The notes under the pieces: model-generated
Seen by the model: the letters and a program-made list of their open reading frames with translations, nothing else
What the model was told of the DNA's origin: nothing
Database searches by the model: none
Source of the DNA: Octopus sinensis
Taxonomy: Eukaryota
Direction of reading: 5' to 3'
Assembly: GCF_006345805.1 (NCBI RefSeq)
Contig: NW_021836571.1
Coordinates: 1 to 23,716, forward strand
DNA length: 23,716 nt
Program-made: the position numbers and the translations under genes
Part shown: piece by piece, positions 378 to 22,623 of the stretch
Position numbering within the stretch: the first letter of the stretch is position 1
How the letters are laid out: each line of letters opens with the position of its first letter

Positions 378-675
378 ATCATAGAAGTGGCTCCCAAAGC
401 GAACTGCGAATATTGTTTTCCTATCAGTTTTAACCGCATTTAGGTCCCTAATCCCAAACAATATAACAACCTCTATGTTTAGAAATAGCCACAGAATCTC
501 ACCTAAAACATTGCAATGTGTGGTGATTGAATCCCTTTCTCTGAAAATATATAATTCATATTCCTCATACGCTTATTCTATGAAGGGCTCAACCGGGGCT
601 GATAAAACAACAACGAGGTATACTCCTCATACATAGCGTTTTGTCCCGAGGAATATAACATATTTCAAAATGTAC

Positions 676-1054
676 GCATTGCTGTGTGGTAAGGATCATG
701 GGAAAAAACTTGTGAGTAGATTTGGTAGATAGAAACTGAAGGAAGCATGTCGTGTGTGTGTGTGTGTATATGTGTTCCTGTGTCTGTATCTGTGTGTGTC
801 TGTGTATGTGTGTATATCTATATGTGTGTGTATCCGTGTGTGTATCTGCGTTTCTTCTCCACCACTCCTCGACAACCGGCGTTGGTGTGCTTACATCTCG
901 TAATTTAACGACTCGACAAAAAATACCGTTGGAATAAGAACCGGGCTTTAAAAAATTAAATAAATAAGTACCGGGATCTATTCGATCGACTGAAAATTTC
1001 TTCCAGTCGGTGTTCCAGCTTGGCCGTAATCTCATGACTGAAAGAAATAAAAGA
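676..1054 (+). mobile_element. SINE family B copy with internal (GT)n tract, internally deleted
   Basis: GCTGTGTGGTAAG head remnant, TTGTGAGTAGATTTGGTAGA..AAACTGAAGGAAGC, (GT)n, GACAACCGGCGTTGGTGTG..CCAGCTTGGCCG; matches 9594-9957. Confidence 0.7.
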
Positions 1055-1975: not shown

Positions 1976-2017
<42 letters not shown>

Positions 2018-2084
2018 TGTGTGTGTGTGTGTGTGTGTTGTGTGTGTGTGTATGTGTGTACTTACATACATACATATATAACAT

Positions 2085-2134
<50 letters not shown>
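1975..2134. repeat. Compound microsatellite (TA)n(TG)n..(CA)n(TA)n
   Basis: Read directly. Confidence 0.9.
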
Positions 2135-2137
<3 letters not shown>

Positions 2138-2260
2138 ACGGGTTTTATACAGAGTTTCTGTCTGCATAATCCATTCAGAAGGCATTGATCGGCCCGGAGT
2201 TTATAGTAGAAGATACCAGCACAAGGTACCGCCTAGTGGAATTGAACCCGAAATTTACTT
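2135..2260 (-). mobile_element. SINE family B 5' fragment, diverged
   Basis: GATCGGCCCGGAGTTTATAGTAGAAGATAC..CAAGGTACC..AGTGGAATTGAACCCG resembles 18480-18600. Confidence 0.55.
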
Positions 2261-8878: not shown

Positions 8879-9593
8879 ACACTTTATAACAATGGCAGGA
8901 GGACGTAAAATGTCAGGTATAACAACTTCCATTATTTTACACAACTATTGACGTGCTGCTTGTGAAGTTAGGCAGCCGATAACAGCATCTGCATTTAACT
9001 CGTCTTTTATCGTCTGCTTTTAGTCGCCATTTTTGTTTGGACCGCTGTACACATTTGTGCATTCTTTGATAAGATCTTTACCAAGAATAGTAAATCTTAA
9101 CTCATCGTGTTGATGGTTATAGAACAAATACCTCCATATTAATAAATAGGGAGAAACAATAATTAATATTTATATTTATATATTTAACGATTTATCAAGA
9201 ACATAAATATATCACAACTAAAAGCCTAAATTTAAGGCAAGAGAAATAAAACACAAGAAAATCTTAGCAAATATTAAAATTTCGGATTGTGAGCAACTTG
9301 TTTCAGAAATTAATTAGTTATTCCCAATTTTCTATCAGATCTCTAATACATGTGTTGATGTCCATATTTCTCCCTTGATAGTTTTTCACAATTTCTGAAA
9401 TGTTTAGATCAGTTGCGATTAATATATGCTACCAAGCGGAATTTAATCCCTTTCTATATGCGTTCATTTTTAATTGTTTTTAATTCTCCTGAAATATAGG
9501 AAATACAACCCGTCCTTTAGTTATGTTATATATAAGAGAAATCCAGCAGAGGTTCGATTTCTATGCATGACTTCAGAAATATTTGTAAACATA

Positions 9594-9957
9594 GGTGCAG
9601 GCGTGGCTGTGTGGTAAGATGCTTGCTTCCCAACCACATGGTTCCGGTTTCTGTCCCACTGCGTGCCACTATGTTCTGTCTGCTACTCTAACCTCGGGCC
9701 GACCAAAGCCTTATGATTGGATTTGGTAGACGAAAACTGAAACAAGCCCGTCCTATATATATATATATAATATATATATTATATATATTGTGTGTGTCAC
9801 TGCACATTCGCTTGACAACCGATGTTGGTGTGTTTACGTCCCCGTAACTTAGCGGTTCGGCAAAAGTCACCGATACAATAAGTCCTGGGTTGGATTTGTT
9901 CGACTAAAGCCGGTGCTCCAACATGGTTGCAGTCAAATGACTACAAGAACTAAAAGT
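9594..9957 (+). mobile_element. SINE family B, near full length
   Basis: tRNA-like head GCAGGCGTGGCTGTGTGGTAAG..GGTTCCGGTTTC, CTCGGGCCGACCAAAGCC, internal (TA)/(GT) tract, tail GCCGGTGCTCCAACATGG..CAAATGACT. Confidence 0.85.
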
Positions 9958-10130
9958 AATATATACAGATATATGTACACACATATTTAAGTTTGTTTTG
10001 TATGCGATATTATATATATGATATGATATGATATTATATATGATAAATAATAACATTACATTCAAGGATTAGTCAATACCCATTCGTAGAGTACAACTGT
10101 ATTAATTTTTACACGGAATAGACTGATAGT

Positions 10131-10699: not shown

Positions 10700-10712
10700 A
10701 GTGTGTGTATGA

Positions 10713-10764
<52 letters not shown>

Positions 10765-10845
10765 TGTGTGTGTGTGTGTGTATGTGTGTGTGTGTGTGTG
10801 TGTGTTTGTGTGTGTGTGCGTGTATGTATGTATATATATATACGA
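10700..10845. repeat. (TA)n(TG)n microsatellite
   Basis: Read directly. Confidence 0.9.
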
Positions 10846-10861
10846 CGCCATGATAGATCTT

Positions 10862-11409: not shown

Positions 11410-12229
11410 TATACAGCGAGTGTTCGTATCTTCCGGTTACCAAATTTTAATTCCTATCGTTCGTTCTCTCACTGAATCTAAAGACAGTTCTTGAATGTGT
11501 TACACGGTTTGAATCCCACGCAGAAACACGTGTTTCCAAAGTCACACTGTCTAACCACTCAACCACAGAACTAAGTATTCCGAAAACTACTACTAGACCA
11601 GGTGAATGGTTGCGAACTGAATAAATACACTTTTATCGAGAGATGAAACGAAGTCTTTATGTTCATAATCTGTTTGAGTTGACGCTGTCAAGAGATTTAA
11701 TTTGATTAATAGGATATTATCAAAGACATTTATGTAAAGAGATCTGAACAGGAAGTCATAAACCCGACAATAAGCTAGTCTCATATCACACATAAATGTT
11801 ACAGTGAAGTACCTTCAACGTGGTTATCTAATGTGTTAGAAATAGCAGCCAGATATCTGTATTATCACATTGCTTTATTGTCTTTCCGTTTAGTCCTGTG
11901 CAGTGAATATAGGTAGGCTGTCTTTGAATGGGTTCGAAAGATTCCATGTACGATTTTCTTTGAGGAGCGGGGACTGTCCCTGCTCTCACTTGTTCTACAT
12001 TTTGGGGCAAAGGGACTTTTTTAAGTGCTGCCCTATGACTCTTCTCGTGGTGAAATTTACCCAATTACACAAGGTAGATAAAAAAAAAAAAGAGCTCGGG
12101 TGTTTAAATTTTGCATGATGTGGACGAAATTATTAGTTTTTCAATATTTACTTTCTCGTGATTTTATATTTCATTCAATTTATTAAAACACAAATAAAAA
12201 AATTGTGATTTATATTACTTTCAATTTTC

Positions 12230-12430
12230 GGCACAAGGCCAGCAATTTTGAGGTAGGTAGTAAGTCGATTATATTTACCCCTGACTTCAACTGGAGTTTA
12301 TTTCGTCGATCCCGAAGGATGAAAGGCAATGTCGATCTCGTGGGAATTTGAACCCAGAACCTAAAGAGGAACGAAATGCCTCTAAACATTCTGCCCGGCG
12401 TGCTAACAGGTATACCAGCTCGCCGCCTTA
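12230..12430 (-). mobile_element. SINE family A, full length
   Basis: Ends CCAGCTCGCCGCCTTA (reverse complement of the head) and begins GGCACAAGGCCAGCAATTTT (reverse complement of the tail). Confidence 0.85.
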
Positions 12431-12449
12431 ACCGTGTTCAATATTCTTT

Positions 12450-12826
12450 TCTACTCCAAGCACATGGCCCGAAATTTTGGGCAGTCGATTAGATCGCCCC
12501 CAGTACGCAACTGGTACTTAATTTATCGACTCGAAAGGATGAAAGGTAAAGTCGACCTCGGCGGAATTCGAACTCAGAACGTAAAGATGAATTACCTATT
12601 TCTTTACTACCCACAAGGGGCTAAACACTGAGAGGACAAACAAGGACAGACAAACGGATTAAGTCGACTATATCGACCCCAATACGTAACTGGTACTTAT
12701 TTAATCGACCCCGAAAGGATAAAAGGCAAACTCGACCTCGGCGGAATTTGAACTCAGAACGTAACGACAGACGAAATACCGCTAATCATTTCGCCCAGTT
12801 AAAGTTTCTGCCAGCTTGCTGCTTTC
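12450..12826 (-). mobile_element. SINE family A dimer: head + 184-bp unit + terminal body
   Basis: Junction motifs at 12780 and 12596 are 184 bp apart; the internal unit carries the CT-rich tail ending GTGGGTAGTAAAGAAATA. Confidence 0.85.
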
Positions 12827-12968
12827 TTATCCGTGATCTATATTAAAGCTCATAGGATTTGCTGCAAAACTAAGCTAAGGGAGCAGATGTGTTTATACGC
12901 AGCCCCCCCCCCCCAAAAAAAAAACAAAGACATATAAATTCCTTTTTATTATTTATTCGAATTTTGAA

Positions 12969-13160
12969 GGCGGTGAGCGGGTAAAATTTGTTGTATTTCG
13001 ACCATCGCTACGTTCTGAGTGCAAATTCCGCCGAAGTTAACTTTGCCTTCCATCTTCTCAGGGTCGGTAATTTAAGTACCAGTGAAACACTGGGGTTGAT
13101 GTAATCGACTTGCCCCCTCCCCAAAATCTCAGACCTTGTGCCATTAGAAGAAATGATTAT
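12969..13160 (+). mobile_element. SINE family A copy (tail CAGACCTTGTGCCATTAGAAGAAA)
   Basis: GGCGGTGAGC head and GCAAATTCCGCCGAAGTTAACTTTGCC body; flanked by 16-bp repeats. Confidence 0.8.
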
Positions 13161-13176
13161 TTATTCGAATTCTGAA

Positions 13177-13392
13177 GGTGGTGAGTTGGAAGAATATTTA
13201 GCGCCCCGGTAGAAAGGGTTAGCGGTATTTCGCCCGTCGCCACGCTCTGAGTTCAAATTCCGCCGAGGTCGATCTTGCGTTTCATCATTACGGGGTCAAT
13301 AAAATAAGTACCAGTTACATATTGGGGTCGGTGTAATTGACTTAATCCCCTCCCCCCGAACTCCCTTTGTGACAAAAATTTGAAATCATTAC
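13177..13392 (+). mobile_element. SINE family A copy (tail TTTGTGACAAAAATTTGAAATC)
   Basis: GGTGGTGAGTTGG head and CTGAGTTCAAATTCCGCCGAGGTCGA body; flanked by 16-bp repeats. Confidence 0.8.
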
Positions 13393-13451
13393 TTATTCGA
13401 ATTATGAAACCCAGCAACCAGAATCGTAGTGCTCCAGACATGCATGTATAG

Positions 13452-13955: not shown

Positions 13956-14540
13956 AATCAAAATACACAGCAAAATTTTATCAGACACATAACCTCTTTG
14001 TCAATTCTCCTGCTTATCATAGAAAATATTACAGTCACATAACAACATGGGAAAGCCATAGTCTGAACTTAGCTATACAGACGTTCTTTACACAGCGTAC
14101 CTTCAAAAACGCCCGAATTTCTTTTGAAGTTGTTTTATCTTACGTTAATATTTTATTTTGTATACTCACTTTCTGGTAATGTCACCGTAAAATGCTTTGG
14201 AATTTGATTCAAATTATTATTATCATTTCCCTTTTCAATATTTTCCTGGTCGTTTTTGCTGCGCTATAAATTTCCACCTCCATATTATCCCTTCATTGAG
14301 CAGTGATGTCTTTCGGGATCGAAATAATGTTTGTGAGTTACGTTTGTCTTGTTTTATTACACAGCTATTTTTGTTTTGTTCTGTTTTGTTTTTGTTCTTT
14401 CTGTCTGCTGTTACATCAACATTCGTGTGTTTGTTGTACAGAATACATTCACTTTATGTGTCGTGTCATTTTACCAGATGCAGTCTGTGTTTACTATGTT
14501 TTGTGTCAATTATGCGGGTATCAAACATCACGTGAGTGAA

Positions 14541-14606
14541 GGCGTATAGCCTAGCGGAGAGGGTATTCGGCTCAGCTCCACGAGGTAGTGTCTTCGATTC
14601 TTGGCA
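14541..14606 (+). mobile_element. Decayed tRNA-like SINE head (not a tRNA gene)
   Basis: GGCGTATAGCCTAGCGG (box-A-like) and TTCGATTC (box-B-like); no consistent cloverleaf. Confidence 0.4.
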
Positions 14607-14633
14607 TTGAGTAAGACAATTTATTTTCGCGTT

Positions 14634-15565
14634 AAGGCGGCGAGCTGGCAGAAACGTTAGCACGCCGGGCGAAATGCTTAGCGGTATTTCGTCTGCATTA
14701 CGTTGTGAGTTCAAATTCCGCCGAGGTCGACTTTGCCTTTCATCCTTTCGGGGTCGATAAATTAAGTACCAGTTACGCACTGGGGTCGATGTAATCGACT
14801 TAATACCTATGTCTGTCCTTGTTTGTCCCCTCTATGTTTAGCCCCTTGTGGGTAATAAAGAAATAGGTATTTCGTCTACCGTTACGTTCTGAGTTCAGAT
14901 TCTGCCGAGTCGACTTTGCCTTTCATCCTTTCGGGGCCGATGTAATCGACTTAATCCTTTTGTTTGTCATTGTTTGTCCCCTCTATGTCACTTCTATTTC
15001 GTCTGCCGTTACGTTCTAATTTCAAATTCCGCCGAGGCCGACTTTGCCTGTCATTCTTTCGGGGTCCATAAATTAAGTACCAGTTACGCACTGGGGTCGA
15101 TATAATCGACTTAATCCCTTTGTCTGTCCTTATCTGTGCCCTCTATGTTTAGACCCTTGTGGGCAATAATAAGAAACGGTAGCCCGCTGGGCGAAATGCT
15201 TAGCGTTATTTCATCTGCCGTTATGTTCTGAGTTCAAATTCCGCCGAAGTCGACTTTGCCTTTCATCCTTTCGGAGTCGATTAAATAAGTACCAGTTACG
15301 CAATGAGGTCGATGTAATCGACTTAATCCGTTTGTCTGTCCTTGTTTGTCCCCTCTGTGTTTATCCCCTTGTGGGTAGTATAGAAATAGGTATTTCATCT
15401 GCCTTTACGTTCTAAGATCAAATTCTGCTCAGGTCGACTTTGCCTTTTGTCCTTTCGGGGTCGATGAATTTAGTACCACTTGCGTACTGGGGTTGATCTA
15501 ATCGACTGCCCCACCCCACCCCCCAAAAAATGTCAGGCTTTGTGCCTAAAGTAGAAAACATCATT
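14634..15565 (+). mobile_element. SINE family A pentamer: head + four internal units + terminal body with standard tail
   Basis: Unit starts at 14683, 14866, about 14994, 15205 and 15389; intact periods are 183-184 bp; unit 2 has an internal deletion; unit 4 is preceded by a partial head from 15172. Confidence 0.9.
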
Positions 15566-15649: not shown

Positions 15650-15678
15650 TATATTATTATTATTATTAGTATTAGTTA

Positions 15679-15728
<50 letters not shown>

Positions 15729-15745
15729 CTATTATTACTATTACG
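15650..15745. repeat. (TAT)n/(TAG)n repeat
   Basis: Read directly. Confidence 0.85.
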
Positions 15746-15955
15746 TTGGTGAGCTGGCAGAATCCGATGAAAACCGGCCGAAATGTTTAGCAGTACTTCG
15801 CCTGTCGCTGGTTCTAAGATCAAATTCTGCCGACGTGGATTTTGTCTTCCATCTTTGGTGTCGATAGATTAAATACCAGTGAAACACTGGAGTCCATTTA
15901 ATCGACTTATCTCCTCCACCAAAACCCCTTGTGGCAAAATTTAAAAACATCAATA
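15746..15955 (+). mobile_element. SINE family A copy, diverged
   Basis: GGTGAGCTGGCAGAATC head, AAATTCTGCCGACG, TACCAGTGAAACACTGG. Confidence 0.75.
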
Positions 15956-15967
15956 TTATAATCATCA

Positions 15968-16006
<39 letters not shown>

Positions 16007-16007
16007 T

Positions 16008-16077
<70 letters not shown>

Positions 16078-16145
16078 TCATCATCATCATCATCATCATT
16101 ATTATTATTACTATAATAATAATAATTATTATTATTATTATTTTT
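15956..16145. repeat. (TCG)n(TCA)n(TAT/AAT)n repeat
   Basis: Read directly. Confidence 0.9.
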
Positions 16146-16517
16146 TTATTATGTTTGTTCTCTTTTTTTCTTTTCTTCTTCGTTACTGTTGTTCGTTCTA
16201 GAATTAATGTTGTGTTCAATATTAGATTATACCAATCAGACTACCAGATCGCTGATAAAACAAATATCATACCAATGTCTGCTTGATTGGGGAATTTATG
16301 TAATTCACATTTAATTAAAACTGAAAGCAATTCCACCAAAAATCAATACAGACTGGTTTCCTTTTGTTTTTGTCTCTGACGATAAATGACAGCAACACAG
16401 TCGAATGTTCTCAGCTTCTCTTCTTAATCTCTTGTTTCCCATTTTCGTCTCTAGATCAACGAAAACATTATCGTTAAGTGTACATATGTTTAGTCGTTTA
16501 TCGTGTGCTTGTTTTAA

Positions 16518-16690
16518 GTCATTAGACTGCGGCCATGCTGGGGCGGCACCGCCTTGAAGAATTTTAGACGAAAGAAATTGACTCTGGTATTTATTTTTAT
16601 CTTTAAGATGGATATGTTTTCTATTGGGTACTTTTGCCGGACCTCTAAGTTACTGGGACGTAGCACACACGAACAAATACACACACGTGT
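16518..16690 (-). mobile_element. SINE family B 3' half, diverged
   Basis: GTCATTAGACTGCGGCCATGCTGGGGCGGCACCGCC is the reverse complement of the family B tail. Confidence 0.6.
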
Positions 16691-16842
16691 ATGTATGTAT
16701 GTATGTATGTATGTATGTATGTATGTATGTATGAATGTATGAATGTATAGACAGATAGATAGATAGACAGACAGGCAGACATATAGATAGATAGATAGAT
16801 AGATAGACAGACAGACAAACAGACAGATAAATAGACAGACAG

Positions 16843-18055: not shown

Positions 18056-18204
18056 TATCATCAGACTAGGGATGGTTAAATTACAACAGGTATACAGCAC
18101 ATTGTTTGTATTATAGTGCATTGTTATACCATTCAAAACATTTTATGCTTTACAAACAATACACAATGCTTCAAGCAAACTACATTACTCTCCTAACAAT
18201 ATAC

Positions 18205-18384
18205 TCTTGGCCATTCTGGAGCACCGGCTGTAGTCGAGCAAATCGAACCCAGGACTTATTCTTTGTAAGCCTAGTACTTATTCTATCGGTTCTTTTTGTC
18301 GAACTGCTAAATGACGGAGAGGTAAACACACCAGCATCGGTTGTCAAGCGATGTTTGGGGGACAAACACTGACACACAAATACA

Positions 18385-18470
<86 letters not shown>

Positions 18471-18637
18471 CATATATACGACGGGTTTCTTTCCGTTTCC
18501 CTCTACCAAATCCACTTACAAGGCTTTTGTCGGCCCGAGGCTATAGTAGGAGACACTTGCCCAATGTGCCACGCAGTGGGACTCAACTCGGAACCATCTG
18601 GTTGGTAAGCAAGGTACTTACCACACATACACTCCTA
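18205..18637 (-). mobile_element. SINE family B, near full length
   Basis: Reverse complement of 9594-9957, including GACACTTGCCCAA (CORE-like CTTGGGCAAGTGTC) and the internal (CA)/(TA) tract. Confidence 0.85.
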
Positions 18638-19094
18638 CGACTATGTGTATCATTGGCGAGAATTTCTCGAGGTATCCTTACTTCCTTCGCCAAGTTTCTC
18701 GGCACACAGTAGACATGCTATAGGGGAGTTCTAACTCACCCGCATCTCTCCAATATAGCGGCTTAAACAAAGGAAATATTGGGGTATTGCATTTCAGGTA
18801 CACAGAGACCTGATGATGGAATATGATTTGAAGTGTTTCAGCAACAACAACAACAACAACAGTACTTCGTTACCTTCAAACATTTCTTCGAAACCGAAAG
18901 TCTTTGATAGGAATCTAACGTTTATCCGCCTGTAATTGGAATGGATGCGGCAAAAATACATCCAATAGTTTACAAAATATTACATTATAACAGGAATTTT
19001 TGCATTTAATTAAAAATTAAATTCGAAAATAAAATGAGAAACTCTCTTACAAGAACGCTAACTTGAAGAACATGAATACAGAAAATCTAGCAAC

Positions 19095-19325
19095 CACATA
19101 TGCCAACATATATATACATATATATATATATATATGTAAATGTGTATATATATATTATTATATATGCATATATATATATGTATGTATATATATATACATA
19201 CATACAAATACACACGTAAATATGTATGTGTGTATTCGCCTATCTCTATATGCATATATACATATATATATATATATGCGCATACAATTATTTCTGTGCA
19301 TGTTTCTATGTATGTATATATATTA
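19095..19325. repeat. Degenerate (TA)/(CA)/(TG) low-complexity repeat
   Basis: Read directly. Confidence 0.85.
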
Positions 19326-20067
19326 CTATATTTTTCTTAATTTTCCTCTTAAAGCCGATTCTAATGAGCTCAGTTACTGCCAACTTTCTGAACAAGATTG
19401 TATCTACATTCTTAATTATTTTCTAATCTAACATCTCACCCAGTTTAATATCCGCAGTTGTGCAGGTTAGTCAAAACTATGAAAATAATTCTATTTCATA
19501 CTCTTTATTTATTTATGTATTCATTTTATTTTACGTTTCGTTTTTTTTCTCTTTTTCCTTGTTTTTATATTTCCCAGGTTTCCTTGCAAGTATGGTTCGC
19601 CATGTTGTTGGTTGGATTCTCAATAAATCATTAATTTTTAGATAAGATTCTTCTTTTACAGCCGTGACAAGGTTTCATCACACATCGTGGCAATTTTTTT
19701 CTTTTTTTTTTTTGTTAGTTTCCTTATAAATTCCTTCCATGGATTTTTATTATATTTTATTTAATTTCAGATTATTTTCAAATTCATTTTACTTTATTTT
19801 CTAATTTCAAACCGAATCTTATTGGTATAAATTAAATATATCGCTGTGAAATTCTTGCTCTGCGTTTTACGCATTGGCATCGAAACGTAAATACATTTTG
19901 GCAATTCCTCTCAGCATTATTGGCTTATTACATAATAATTTACATATTCTTAATTCTTTTCAGTTTTTTCTTTATTTTGCAGGTTTCACTCATTGGACTG
20001 CGACCATGCTGGAGCACGTCTCTCAGGCCATTAATTGGATCATATTGAACTTGGTATTTTGTCCGGT

Positions 20068-21191
20068 AAGGCGGCGAGCTGGCAGAATCGTTAGCACGCC
20101 GGGCGAAATTCTTAACAGTATTTCGTCTGCCGCTACGTTCTGAGTTCAAATTCCGCCGAGGTCGATTTTGCCTTTCATCCTTTCGGGATCGATAAATTAA
20201 GTACCTGTTACGCACTGAAGTCGATGTAATCGACTTAATCCGTTTGTCTGTCCTTGTTTGTCCTCTCTGCGTTTAGCTCCTTGTGGGTAGTAAAGAAATA
20301 GGTATTTCGCCTGCCGTTACGTTCTGAGTTCAAATTCCGCCGAGGTCGACTTTGCCTTTCATCCTCTCGGTGTCGATAAATTAAGTACCAGTTACGCACT
20401 GGAGTCGATGTAATCGACTTAATCCGTTTATATGTCCTTGTTTGTCCCTTCTGTGTTTAGACCCTTGTATGTAGTAAAAAATTAGGTATTTCGTCTGTTG
20501 TTACGTTCTGAGTTGAAATTCCGCCAAGGTCGACTTTGCCTTTCATCCTTTCGGGGTCGATAAATTAAGTAGCAGTTACGCACTGGGGTCGATGTAATCG
20601 ACTTAATCCGTTTGTATGTCCTTGTTTGTCCTCTCTGTGTTTAGCCCCTGGTGGATAGTAACGAAATAGGTATTTTGTCTGCCGTTACGTTCTGAGTTCA
20701 AATTCCGCCGAGGTCGACTTTGCCTTTCACCCTTTCGGGGTCGATAAATTAAGTAGCAGTTACGCACTGGGGTCAATGTAATCTACTTAATTCCTTTGTC
20801 TGTCCTTGCCTGTCCTCTCTGTATTTAGCCCCTTGTGAGTAGTAAAGAAATAGGTATTTCGTCTGCCGTTACGTTCTGAGTTCAAATTCCGCCGAAGTCG
20901 ACTTTGCCTTTGATCCTTTCGGCGTCGATAAATTAAGTACCAGTGACGCACTGGGGTCAATGTAATCGACTTAATCCGTTTGTCTGTCCTTGTTTGTCCT
21001 CTCTGTGTTTAGCCCCTTGTGAGTAGTAAAGAAACAGGTATTTCGTCTGCCGTTACGTTCTGAATTCAATTTCTGCCAAGGTCGGCTTTGCCTTTCATCC
21101 TTCCGGAGTTACGCACTGGAGTCGATGTAATCGACTTAGTCTGTTTGTTTGTCCTCTCTGTGTTTAGCCCCTTGTGGGTAGTAAAGAAATA
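20068..21191 (+). mobile_element. SINE family A hexamer: one head + six units of 184-bp period (last internally deleted)
   Basis: Unit starts at 20117, 20301, 20485, 20669, 20853 and 21037; flanking 14-bp repeats at 20053-20066 and 21192-21205. Confidence 0.95.
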
Positions 21192-21694
21192 GGTATTTTG
21201 TCTGGCTCTGATGTCTTTCCCTGTGCACGTCAGATAAAAAATACAAAACGTTTATTCGGAGTCAACGGGTGATAATTCTTTCGCATACGGATATCGCTGC
21301 GTATTTCCATTACAATATAACAATTTTCACCCCCTGCTAATATAAGCTCGTGTTTATACGGAACACCATACAAACATTCACACACAAACACGTGTACTGA
21401 TCTGGTGAGCGTAAAACTCGCAGATATACCCAAATAACTGAATGTAATAAACAGCATTACCTCTGAGGAGAAAAGAGTTGTAATTGCTGTCCATGTTGTA
21501 AGAAAACAATTATCGAGAACTCAATAAGGTTTGAAAATCAATCAAAATTTGTCCATCATTTTTCTTCAAACTACGTAGTAACAGTTAAAATTTGCTGCTT
21601 GAATTTATTACTCTGCGTCGCTTTAAATACATTTTGTCATACCCTGGCCATGCATGGACAGAGATCTGCGTTAAAAGCCAGCTTATACTACTTT

Positions 21695-22205: not shown

Positions 22206-22278
22206 AATAATAATAATAATAATAATGATAATAATAATAATAATAATAATCTATTAGATAATAATAATAATAATAATG

Positions 22279-22320
<42 letters not shown>

Positions 22321-22329
22321 TAATAATAT
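22206..22329. repeat. (AAT)n microsatellite
   Basis: Read directly. Confidence 0.9.
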
Positions 22330-22622
<293 letters not shown>

Positions 22623-22623
22623 A

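What the first reader, a model, noticed from the sequence alone, without database searches (positions are those of the whole stretch)
20053..21205. Head-(184 bp)6 SINE array whose flanking duplication mimics its own unit junction: candidate self-targeting or rolling-template SINE system
There is one 5' head, then units at an exact 184-bp period. Each unit starts GGTATTT(C/T)G(T/C)CTG, contains the box-B-like GAGTTCAAATTCC and lacks box A. The array is bracketed by GGTATTTTGTCCGG (20053-20066) and GGTATTTTGTCTGG (21192-21205), 13/14 identical. So the apparent target site in unique DNA resembles the motif inside the SINE where units are joined. Model A: a sequence-specific endonuclease cuts at GGTATTTYGTC, so the SINE repeatedly inserts into itself. 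Model B: a circular or multimeric RNA is reverse-transcribed round and primed by homology to the target. Model C: copying of a multimeric master or local unequal crossing-over. The sequence alone cannot separate these, and I cannot confirm that this is undescribed.
Basis: partly seen in the sequence, partly recalled or inferred. Interest (0 to 1): 0.8.

Follow-up and report, generated by a model that had tools for sequence, protein, structure and literature searches.

The report
SINE-derived tandem array with look-alike flank
One insertion of a short retrotransposon (SINE) has its last 184 bases repeated six times, and its flanking duplication resembles the repeat junction; this is a known kind of SINE-derived tandem array, with a useful clue to how such arrays start.

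Summary
One head (20067-20116) is followed by five exact 184-bp units and a sixth of 155 bp. The whole is bracketed by GGTATTTTGTCCGG and GGTATTTTGTCTGG (13/14).

Each unit runs from SINE position ~49 to the SINE's natural 3' end (…GAAATA). The "CT tail" is therefore an internal linker. The same junction occurs at three other places in the window, so it was not created from this flank.

The flanking repeat is a real target-site duplication. Both copies share T8 and G14 against the unit consensus, and the left copy lies inside an old, reversed copy of a second SINE, so the target is not unique DNA. Its likeness to the junction (11-12/14) is not chance: 0 of 18,004 window 14-mers do as well.

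Units of this array are no closer to each other than to units in other arrays. A two-unit form is dispersed. Elsewhere in the window, two different elements share one triplicated target site.

Best reading: the retrotransposition machinery joins this SINE's 3' end to GGTAT-type sites, including its own position 49. DNA-level unequal exchange remains a serious rival. Head-(unit)n arrays within one TSD pair are already described in bivalves and squamates, so I rate this a new member of a known kind, of moderate interest.

The parts
19975..20052 (-). Old, decayed copy of a second SINE family, in reverse orientation. It is the DNA into which the array inserted. Its clearest block is 19984-20017.
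   Evidence: Local alignment of 19975-20066 to in-window copies at 9560-9960(-) and 16500-16720(+) gives z = 9.4 and 8.5, with 0/200 shuffles as good.
20053..20066 (+). Left copy of the target-site duplication, GGTATTTTGTCCGG. The last GG may belong to the SINE's 5' leader GG(T)TAAGG, which would be microhomology at the 5' junction.
   Evidence: It matches 21192-21205 at 13/14 with anchored P = 0.0008. It shares T8 and G14 with the right copy against C8 and C14 in the unit consensus.
20067..20116 (+). The single SINE head (leader plus 5' ~48 nt), carrying the only box-A-like motif, TGGCAGAATCG, at 20080-20090.
   Evidence: It aligns with the heads of other copies at 14634, 12826(-), 12429(-), 13175 and 161. 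ARAGORN and the Rfam tRNA model do not call it.
20117..20300 (+). Unit 1 (184 bp), contiguous with the head. It runs from SINE position ~49 to the 3' end. The box-B-like GAGTTCAAATTCC is at 20142-20154 and the core hairpin GTCGATGTAATCGAC at 20220-20234.
20301..21036 (+). Units 2-5, four exact 184-bp units (20301, 20485, 20669, 20853). Each starts GGTATTT(C/T)G and ends …GTAGTAAAGAAA(T/C)A.
   Evidence: TRF period 184; spacing. Units differ from the CT consensus by 3.8-7.1%.
21037..21191 (+). Unit 6 (155 bp, with internal deletions of 19 and 10 nt). It ends at the SINE's natural 3' end, …GTAGTAAAGAAATA.
   Evidence: Unit alignment. Tail homology to normal-type copies.
21192..21205 (+). Right copy of the target-site duplication, GGTATTTTGTCTGG. 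It is not the start of a seventh unit.
   Evidence: It carries T8 and G14 like the left copy, unlike the unit consensus GGTATTTCGTCTGC. The single difference from the left copy (T12 versus C12) is a CpG-to-TpG change.
14634..15560 (+). Second multi-unit locus of the same lineage: head+B1, B2 (deleted), B3, then head (from position ~18)+B4, then B5 with the normal tail. The same junction occurs at 14866/14867 and 15389/15390.
12195..12860 (-). Third locus: TSD, then a dimer (head+C1 CT unit+C2 normal unit), then TSD, then a different monomer, then TSD. The same junction occurs at 12596/12597.
   Evidence: The outer repeats TAATATAGATCAC and TAATATAAATCAC match 12/13, and the internal copy is AATATTGAACAC. 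Anchored 12-mer tests give 10/12 with P = 0.0012 and 10/12 with P = 0.0018. The two elements are 74-76% identical.

Best explanation
**What it is**
This is one retrotransposon insertion locus of a SINE with a tRNA-like (box A/box B) head and a conserved core. It is bounded by a genuine 12-14-bp target-site duplication. The 184-bp segment from SINE position ~49 to the SINE's own 3' end is present six times behind a single head.

**The junction**
The unit junction (…GAAATA|GGTATTTCGTCTG) is the SINE's 3' end joined to SINE position 49. It is a family-level feature rather than a product of this locus.

**Proposed mechanism (inferred)**
- The LINE-type target-primed reverse transcription that moves this family starts on primers from sites beginning RNTAT. 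All scorable TSDs start that way, directly after the GAAANN end.
- The SINE carries such a site, GGTAT, at position 49, in the 3' strand of a conserved head hairpin.
- The 3' end of a SINE RNA can therefore be copied onto position 49 of another or the same SINE. This could happen by nested insertion followed by read-through transcription, or by the nascent cDNA end …AAATACC re-priming on an RNA 3' end.
- The result is heritable head-(unit)n multimers.

**This locus**
This copy went into a GGTATTTTGTCC site inside an old reversed SINE. The flank mimics the junction because both are places where the same SINE 3' end was joined to a GGTATTTYGTC-like primer.

**Shown versus inferred**
- Shown: the anatomy, the TSD, the shared junction at other loci, dispersal of the dimer, and the lack of array-specific clustering.
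- Inferred: that reverse transcription rather than DNA recombination did the joining, and whether six units arrived together.
For: 1. The unit equals position ~49 to the true 3' end. The CT segment aligns to the normal tail …CCTTGTGCC…GAAA of nine other copies. One breakpoint therefore coincides with an RNA end, as expected for a reverse-transcription product.
2. The identical junction occurs at 14866/7, 15389/90 and 12596/7(-), in different surroundings.
3. The dimers B4-B5 and C1-C2 share subfamily markers in both units (T77/A80, plus five markers in the second unit) but have different flanks. Multimers therefore spread as units.
4. The array's units are 3.8-7.1% from the consensus, the same as single units elsewhere (4.4-6.0%). 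Shared derived variants are 0.53 per pair within the array against 0.43 per pair between arrays, so there is no clustering by array. The TSD's 1/14 mismatch fits the same age.
5. The TSD is target-derived and significant. Paired as bottom-strand primer against RNA, 12 of 14 positions pair including one G:U, and the seven 3'-terminal primer bases pair perfectly (read from the sequence).
6. The other flank or junction repeats that can be scored (C-cluster outer pair, C-cluster internal copy, and the monomer at 161-372) also begin immediately after GAAANN, with AATAT-type pentamers. One target site is triplicated with two unrelated elements between the copies.
7. Base pairing between the RNA 3' end and the nicked target at TPRT initiation is documented for I factor, R1Bm, R2Ol and RTE-type elements (PMC6007223).
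Against: - Only one window was available. No other copy of this genome could be retrieved, so n = 2 for CT-lineage joining sites.
- Some neighbouring units share variants (A3/A4, A4/A5 twice, A2/A3). B1-B3 share an array-specific base. Both hint at some local DNA-level duplication.
- No partner LINE, no SINE RNA 3' end and no empty allele were examined.
- The RNTAT start of the TSDs is weak evidence in a 64% A+T sequence.
- Rfam and ARAGORN do not support a tRNA origin for the head, so Pol III transcription is inferred from motifs only.
Confidence: 0.5

Rival explanations
1. DNA-level origin. A monomer or dimer inserted here, and the 184-bp unit was then amplified by replication slippage or unequal sister-chromatid exchange. 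The first step was helped by the 11-12/14 homology between the right TSD and SINE position 49-62, exactly 184 bp upstream. On this view the flank mimics the junction because such homology makes a locus prone to become an array (ascertainment).
For: - It explains the period, the single head and the mimicry in one step.
- The literature on SINE tandem arrays invokes unequal recombination, including between TSDs (PMC11481361; PMC10702118).
- Adjacent units share a few derived variants, and B1-B3 share an array-specific base.
- The junction B3 to B4 lies at an AGAAA microhomology, as a deletion would.
Against: - The same junction exists at three other places and in a dispersed dimer, so it need not and probably did not arise here.
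- Units of this array are as far from each other (87.5-92.4% identity) as from units of other arrays, and they do not cluster. Any local amplification must have been completed early.
Confidence: 0.3
2. Strict form of the reader's Model A. The partner LINE, or the CT lineage's RNP, has a long sequence-specific target GGTATTTYGTC. It therefore hits SINE position 49 and look-alike sites in the genome.
For: The two places where a CT-type 3' end meets a target-like sequence are the family junction and this locus. They share GGTATTT.GTC.G, and chance is below 1 in 18,004 for a fixed register.
Against: - TSDs of related copies share only the first ~5 nt (TAATATAGATCAC, AATATATCATAGAAG).
- Given an RNTAT preference, the remaining 6-7 of 9 matches have P of roughly 0.01-0.03 by my own binomial estimate. 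That is suggestive but rests on n = 2.
- No LINE endonuclease was available to examine.
Confidence: 0.1
3. Circular-RNA or rolling-circle template (the circular form of Model B; retrozyme-like). A 184-nt circular RNA is reverse-transcribed round and round.
For: The exact period and near-consensus units would fit.
Against: - No hammerhead or other ribozyme family matches the array, even at E <= 10.
- A head outside the repeating unit is present.
- The unit ends coincide with a linear SINE's 3' end.
- The dimers have two different unit types (CT and normal), which a single circle cannot give.
Confidence: 0.03
4. Coincidence. This is an ordinary TSD that happens to resemble the unit start.
For: The genome is A+T-rich, and TSDs of this family tend to start RNTAT.
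Against: The match is 11-12/14 at the exact junction register. No 14-mer among 18,004 outside the SINE clusters reaches 11/14.
Confidence: 0.05

Closest known systems
TSD1-(SINE)n-TSD1 tandem-like SINE structures in the blood clam Scapharca broughtonii (PMC11481361)
   Same: [quoted passage not shown] The host is also a mollusc.
   Different: There, the repeated copies are also truncated in the 3' tail, and only the last copy has a complete tail. Here every unit runs to the natural 3' end, and the TSD resembles the breakpoint. No such TSD-breakpoint likeness appears in the passages I read.
SINE-derived satellites (sSats) of squamate reptiles (PMC10702118)
   Same: These are tandem repeats made from part of a SINE, with a longer terminal unit that extends to the SINE terminus. 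Repeat length is in the 150-180 bp class.
   Different: sSats reach up to 1000 units and are homogenised. Their TSDs were not analysed. Here there are six old, non-homogenised units inside one TSD pair.
TSD1-(SINE-TSD1)n arrays and Alu target-site triplication (Lee et al. 2015, cited in PMC11481361)
   Same: The locus 12195-12860 has TSD-SINE-TSD-SINE-TSD.
   Different: Those cases are ascribed to unequal recombination between TSDs of one element. Here the two elements are different (a dimer and a monomer, 74-76% identical), which points to re-use of the site.
Base pairing of the RNA 3' end with the nicked target in TPRT (I factor, R1Bm, R2Ol, RTE-type SINEs; PMC6007223), and internal priming of L1/Alu (from my own knowledge, Srikanta et al. 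2009)
   Same: The start of the TSD correlates with sequence carried on the template RNA. This would explain a TSD that looks like the sequence next to the SINE 3' end in a multimer.
   Different: Reported microhomologies are 1-2 nt in animals or involve simple repeats. Here up to 12/14 positions could pair.
Dimeric or multimeric SINEs that amplify as units (Alu; multimers of Dip/B1 in jerboa, mentioned in PMC10702118)
   Same: The two-unit form (CT unit plus normal unit) occurs at two loci with shared markers in both halves.
   Different: Only the first monomer has a head. Later units start at position 49.
Octopus OR2 and other CORE-SINEs (Ohshima and Okada 1994, cited in PMC4758252)
   Same: There is a tRNA-like head plus a conserved central block (…TTTCATCCTTTCGGGGTCGATAAATTAAGTACC…). 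From memory this resembles the MIR/CORE domain.
   Different: Membership was not tested: no consensus library was available, and the organism was not identified by any tool.

Membership tests
SINE (LINE-mobilised, Pol III-type head) | Internal box A and box B promoter derived from a small RNA | tested here: inconclusive
   TGGCAGAATCG (9/11 to TRGCNNAGTGG) lies at 20080-20090, and GAGTTCAAATTCC lies in every unit. ARAGORN finds no tRNA and Rfam gives no hit even at E <= 10.
SINE (LINE-mobilised, Pol III-type head) | Short, dispersed, multi-copy, with 5'-truncated copies | tested here: met
   At least 13 copies or fragments lie on both strands of the window at 66-91% identity.
SINE (LINE-mobilised, Pol III-type head) | Target-site duplications of variable sequence | tested here: met
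   Array: 13/14, P = 0.0008. C cluster: 12/13 (10/12 in the anchored test, P = 0.0012). Monomer at 161-372: 12/15 by eye (9/12 in the anchored test, P = 0.0054).
SINE (LINE-mobilised, Pol III-type head) | 3' tail shared with a partner LINE | not testable with these tools
   There is no LINE in the window (ORF list) and no genome of the organism could be reached.
SINE-derived tandem array (sSat; TSD1-(SINE)n-TSD1) | Tandem units that are a portion of a SINE, with a longer terminal unit reaching the SINE terminus | tested here: met
   Period 184, one head plus six units.
SINE-derived tandem array (sSat; TSD1-(SINE)n-TSD1) | A single TSD pair around the whole array | tested here: met
   20053-20066 and 21192-21205, 13/14.
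SINE-derived tandem array (sSat; TSD1-(SINE)n-TSD1) | Internal units truncated at both head and 3' tail, as described for the clam arrays | tested here: not met
   Units are head-truncated but keep the full 3' end, …CCCCTTGTGGGTAGTAAAGAAATA, which is homologous to normal tails.
Multimeric SINE amplifying as a unit | The same multimer architecture at independent loci with different flanks | tested here: met
   Met for the dimer only: B4-B5 and C1-C2 share markers in both units. It cannot be tested for the six-unit form.
Site-specific non-LTR targeting (R2- or Dong-like) | The same long target sequence at independent insertions | tested here: inconclusive
   There are two CT-type joining sites, both GGTATTTYGTC-like. 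Other TSDs of the family differ after ~5 nt.
Retrozyme / ribozyme-bearing circular-RNA tandem repeats | A self-cleaving (hammerhead) ribozyme in each unit | tested here: not met
   No Rfam family matches 20040-20320 at E <= 10, and none matches the array in the whole-window scan.
MITE- or Helitron-borne tandem repeats (bivalve type) | Terminal inverted repeats or Helitron ends flanking the array | tested here: not met
   No inverted repeat pairs the two array ends. Only one weak AT-rich pair lies ~290-325 nt outside either end (I1), and the other pairs are within or between units. Helitron ends were not looked for specifically.

The most novel reading that the evidence does not exclude
The reverse transcriptase that moves this SINE repeatedly re-primes. 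When the growing cDNA reaches position 49, at the loop of the head hairpin, its end …AAATACC is released and used again as a primer on the 3' end of the same or another SINE RNA, exactly as a nicked GGTATTT… target is used. One insertion event would then lay down head-(184 bp)n. The same rule would make resident SINEs and their TSDs preferred targets. SINE satellites would be born by "rolling" target-primed reverse transcription rather than by recombination.
Probability: 0.2. Interest if true: 0.7.

Novelty: new member of a known kind. Interest (0 to 1): 0.4.

Why it matters
How interspersed repeats turn into tandem repeats (satellites) is an open question. The first duplication is usually just attributed to unequal recombination.

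This locus, and the family around it, offers a concrete and testable rule. One breakpoint is the SINE RNA's 3' end. The other is an internal site that looks like the family's insertion sites. The locus's own target duplication looks like that internal site.

If a genome-wide survey confirms the rule, it would show that the retrotransposition machinery itself seeds SINE-derived satellites. It would also explain why these SINEs pile up head-to-tail. If the survey does not confirm it, this is one more ordinary SINE-derived tandem array.

Tried and rejected
1. **The junction was created locally from the TSD.** Rejected as the sole origin, because the same junction is present at three other places.
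2. **The right 14-mer is just the start of a seventh unit.** Rejected: it shares T8 and G14 with the left copy, not with the units.
3. **The natural SINE tail includes GGTATTT (terminal redundancy, Pol III stop at TTTT).** I first inferred this from the conserved RNTAT after GAAANN. I dropped it when the left flanks of the C cluster and of the monomer at 161 showed that this pentamer belongs to the TSD.
4. **The last units B5 and C2 are older resident copies hit independently.** Not supported: the excess of private changes is small, and both halves share markers.
5. **The left flank is an old SINE1 tail in the same orientation.** There is a 9-mer ATATTGAAC shared with the C2 tail, and a 31-mer 74% identical to a unit end. 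Shuffling tests are weak (z <= 3). Collinearity with the reversed second SINE is much stronger. This is left as unexplained.
6. **Continuity of the second SINE across the empty site.** The right flank is only marginal (z = 2.6).
7. **External copies.** Nothing came from a protein-space search of translated units (one distant hit), DNA pattern scans of metagenome, viral and prokaryote-genome collections, or sequence strings in the paper library.
8. **tRNA or ribozyme identity.** Rfam and ARAGORN gave nothing.
Full report
**1. The observation**

- Tandem Repeats Finder reports 20118-21106 with period 184, 5.4 copies and 90% matches.
- The repeat finder gives start-to-start spacings of 184, 184, 184, 184 and then 155.
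- In the register that starts with GG, the units are 20117-20300, 20301-20484, 20485-20668, 20669-20852, 20853-21036 and 21037-21191.
- The sixth unit is shortened by deletions of 19 and 10 nt.
- A single head (20067-20116) holds the only box-A-like motif, TGGCAGAATCG at 20080-20090. Every unit holds GAGTTCAAATTCC or a one- or two-base variant of it.
- GGTATTTTGTCCGG (20053-20066) and GGTATTTTGTCTGG (21192-21205) are at the stated coordinates and match 13/14.

**2. Is the bracket more than chance, and is it a target-site duplication?**

- In a test anchored on the SINE ends (the 12-mer after the 3' end against the 34 nt before the head), P = 0.0008.
- Both copies carry T at position 8 and G at position 14, where the unit consensus GGTATTTCGTCTGC has C and C. 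The right copy is therefore target-derived and not the start of a seventh unit.
- The one difference between the copies (C12/T12) is a CpG-to-TpG change.
- The left copy's best register in a consensus unit is the junction (11/14; next best 8/14). None of 18,004 window 14-mers outside the SINE clusters reaches 11/14 to the junction 14-mer. The mimicry is real.

**3. What the unit is**

The window holds at least 13 other copies or fragments of the same SINE.
- Aligning them shows that the CT-rich segment is not a free tail. Its end, …TTTAGCCCCTTGTGGGTAGTAAAGAAATA, is homologous to the normal 3' end, …CCTTGTGCC…GAAA. About 30 CT-rich bases replace the normal CCCC…AAAA stretch.
- GGTATTTCGTCTG is native SINE sequence. 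In other copies the head reads …GCTTAGCGGTATTTCGTCTGCCG.
- Each 184-bp unit is therefore SINE position ~49 through the natural 3' end. The junction is "3' end joined to position 49".
- The same junction is present at 14866/14867, 15389/15390 and, on the minus strand, 12596/12597. It was not made from this locus's flank.
- Position 49-60 is the 3' strand of a hairpin whose 5' strand (GGGCGAAATGC) lies in the head. The hairpin is kept in the RNAalifold consensus of ten copies, and by eye some copies read GGAC/GUCC where others read GGGC/GUCU. The breakpoint sits at its loop.

**4. The surroundings**

- The left flank 19975-20066, including most of the 14-mer, is collinear with reversed copies of a second SINE family present at 9560-9960(-), 16500-16720 and 18180-18660 (z = 9.4 and 8.5). 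The target is an old SINE, not unique DNA.
- Continuation of that old copy into the right flank is only marginal (z = 2.6).
- No terminal inverted repeats flank the array.
- Rfam finds no tRNA, ribozyme or other family in it, even at E <= 10. ARAGORN finds no tRNA.

**5. Unit relationships**

- Units of this array differ from the CT-type consensus by 3.8-7.1%. Single units elsewhere (B1, B4, C1) differ by 4.4-6.0%.
- Pairwise identity within the array (87.5-92.4%) equals that between arrays.
- Shared derived variants run at 0.53 per pair within the array and 0.43 per pair between this array and others. The units do not cluster by array, although neighbours A3/A4, A4/A5 and A2/A3 share a few changes.
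- The TSD's single mismatch in 14 fits the same age. The six units therefore date from about the time of insertion.
- In the second locus, B1-B3 share one array-specific base.
- B4-B5 and C1-C2 have the same two-unit architecture (a CT unit followed by a normal-type unit with the normal tail). They share markers in both halves and have different flanks. Multimers do spread as units.

**6. How this family inserts**

- TSD-type repeats can be scored for the array, for the minus-strand cluster (outer pair and internal copy) and for the monomer at 161-372.
- In each, the repeat begins immediately after the SINE's GAAANN end with an RNTAT-like pentamer: GGTAT, (T)AATAT, AATAT.
- The SINE's 5' end is GG(T)TAAGG. 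The last GG of the left 14-mer may therefore be leader sequence, which would be microhomology at the 5' junction.
- The minus-strand cluster is TSD, dimer, TSD, monomer, TSD: TAATATAGATCAC, AATATTGAACAC, TAATATAAATCAC. The two elements are only 74-76% identical, so one target site was used twice.
- At 12890-13450, three or more full-length copies about 77% identical lie head to tail, joined by the same 19-nt ATTAYTTATTCGAATTNTG.
- The one external relative I could fetch, a Logan contig of unknown organism, also shows five related units head to tail.

**7. Explanation**

The best-supported reading is that the retrotransposition machinery itself joins this SINE's 3' end to GGTAT-type sites, one of which is the SINE's own position 49. 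This gives heritable head-(unit)n multimers.
- One such copy, or a copy built up during insertion, went into a GGTATTTTGTCC site. The flank resembles the junction because both are products of the same joining reaction.
- Read as primer against RNA, the bottom strand of the target, CCGGACAAAATACC, pairs with GGUAUUUCGUCUGC at 12 of 14 positions, and the 3'-terminal seven pair perfectly.
- Pairing between the RNA 3' end and the nicked target at initiation is documented for several non-LTR elements (PMC6007223).
- I put this at about 0.5.

The main rival (about 0.3) is DNA-level slippage or unequal exchange after insertion, favoured by the TSD's homology to position 49-62. It explains the mimicry by ascertainment. 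It is weakened by the pre-existing junction elsewhere and by the lack of array-specific clustering.

The other rivals are weaker:
- A dedicated endonuclease for GGTATTTYGTC (0.1) rests on n = 2.
- A circular-RNA template (0.03) lacks any ribozyme and cannot give the mixed dimers.
- Pure chance is about 0.05.

**8. Comparison with what is known**

- The architecture [quoted passage not shown] is described for a clam (PMC11481361).
- Tandem repeats from part of a SINE, with a longer terminal unit, are described in squamates (PMC10702118).
- Target-site triplication is described for Alu and for bivalve SINEs.
- The differences here are that the units keep the full 3' end, that the TSD resembles the breakpoint, and that the triplicated site holds unrelated elements.
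- I found no description for cephalopods. I searched the held library and read in detail only two recent octopus genome and repeat papers.
- The organism was not identified by any tool. The repeat landscape looks octopus-like to me from memory only.

**9. Verdict**

This is a new member of a known kind, with interest 0.4.

Noticed in passing
window 12195-12860 (minus strand): A target site is triplicated around two different SINE elements. The order is TAATATAGATCAC, then dimer (head+CT unit+normal unit), then AATATTGAACAC, then an unrelated monomer (74-76% identical), then TAATATAAATCAC. This suggests the same nick site was used twice.
   Followed up: partly
window 12890-13450: Three or more full-length copies of the SINE (~77% identical to each other) lie head to tail, joined by the same 19-nt linker ATTAYTTATTCGAATTNTG. 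A degenerate tail lies upstream, and the last copy is cut by a (CA)n run. TRF did not call this array.
   Followed up: partly
window 14634-15560: A composite locus: head+B1, B2 (32-nt and other deletions), B3, then a head starting at position ~18 fused to B3's tail at the microhomology AGAAAC, then B4 and B5 with the normal tail.
   Followed up: partly
window 20098-20130, and the same region of other copies: A conserved hairpin: GGGCGAAATGC in the head pairs with GGTATTTCGTCTG at the unit start. The tandem-duplication breakpoint lies at its loop, so units 2-6 carry an unpaired 3' strand.
   Followed up: partly
window 20036-20066 versus 20652-20682 and 21175-21205: The left flank resembles the unit end beyond the 14-mer (31 nt, 74%), and it shares the 9-mer ATATTGAAC with the tail at 12437-12445(-). 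Shuffling tests are weak and the cause is unexplained.
   Followed up: partly
window 9560-9960(-), 16500-16720, 18180-18660, 600-1010(-), 19984-20017: A second abundant SINE family with a (TG/TA)n-rich middle. It shares the …GATAAA.TAAGTACC… core block with the first family.
   Followed up: no
window 14540-14625: A tRNA-like stretch (…GCCTAGCGGAGAGGGTATTCGGCTCAGC…GTCTTCGATTC…) lies directly upstream of the B1 head. It may be a third SINE head. ARAGORN does not call it.
   Followed up: no
window 2011-2140, 19146-19290, 10700-10850 and others: The Rfam hits to mir-297, mir-466 and similar families all fall below their gathering scores and lie on TG/TA microsatellites. They are low-complexity artefacts.
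   Followed up: no
L001 1-1257 (Logan SRR11869390 contig): A contig from an unidentified organism holds five diverged units of a related SINE head to tail, each ending …GAAAGA(A/G)TTATTCAGG. One unit is 5'-truncated, so tandem stacking seems to be a trait of the wider family.
   Followed up: partly
window 15652-16152 and 22206-22623: Long trinucleotide microsatellites, (TAG)n, (ATC)n, (ATT)n and (ATG)n, directly abut SINE copies, for example the monomer at 15748-15960.
   Followed up: no
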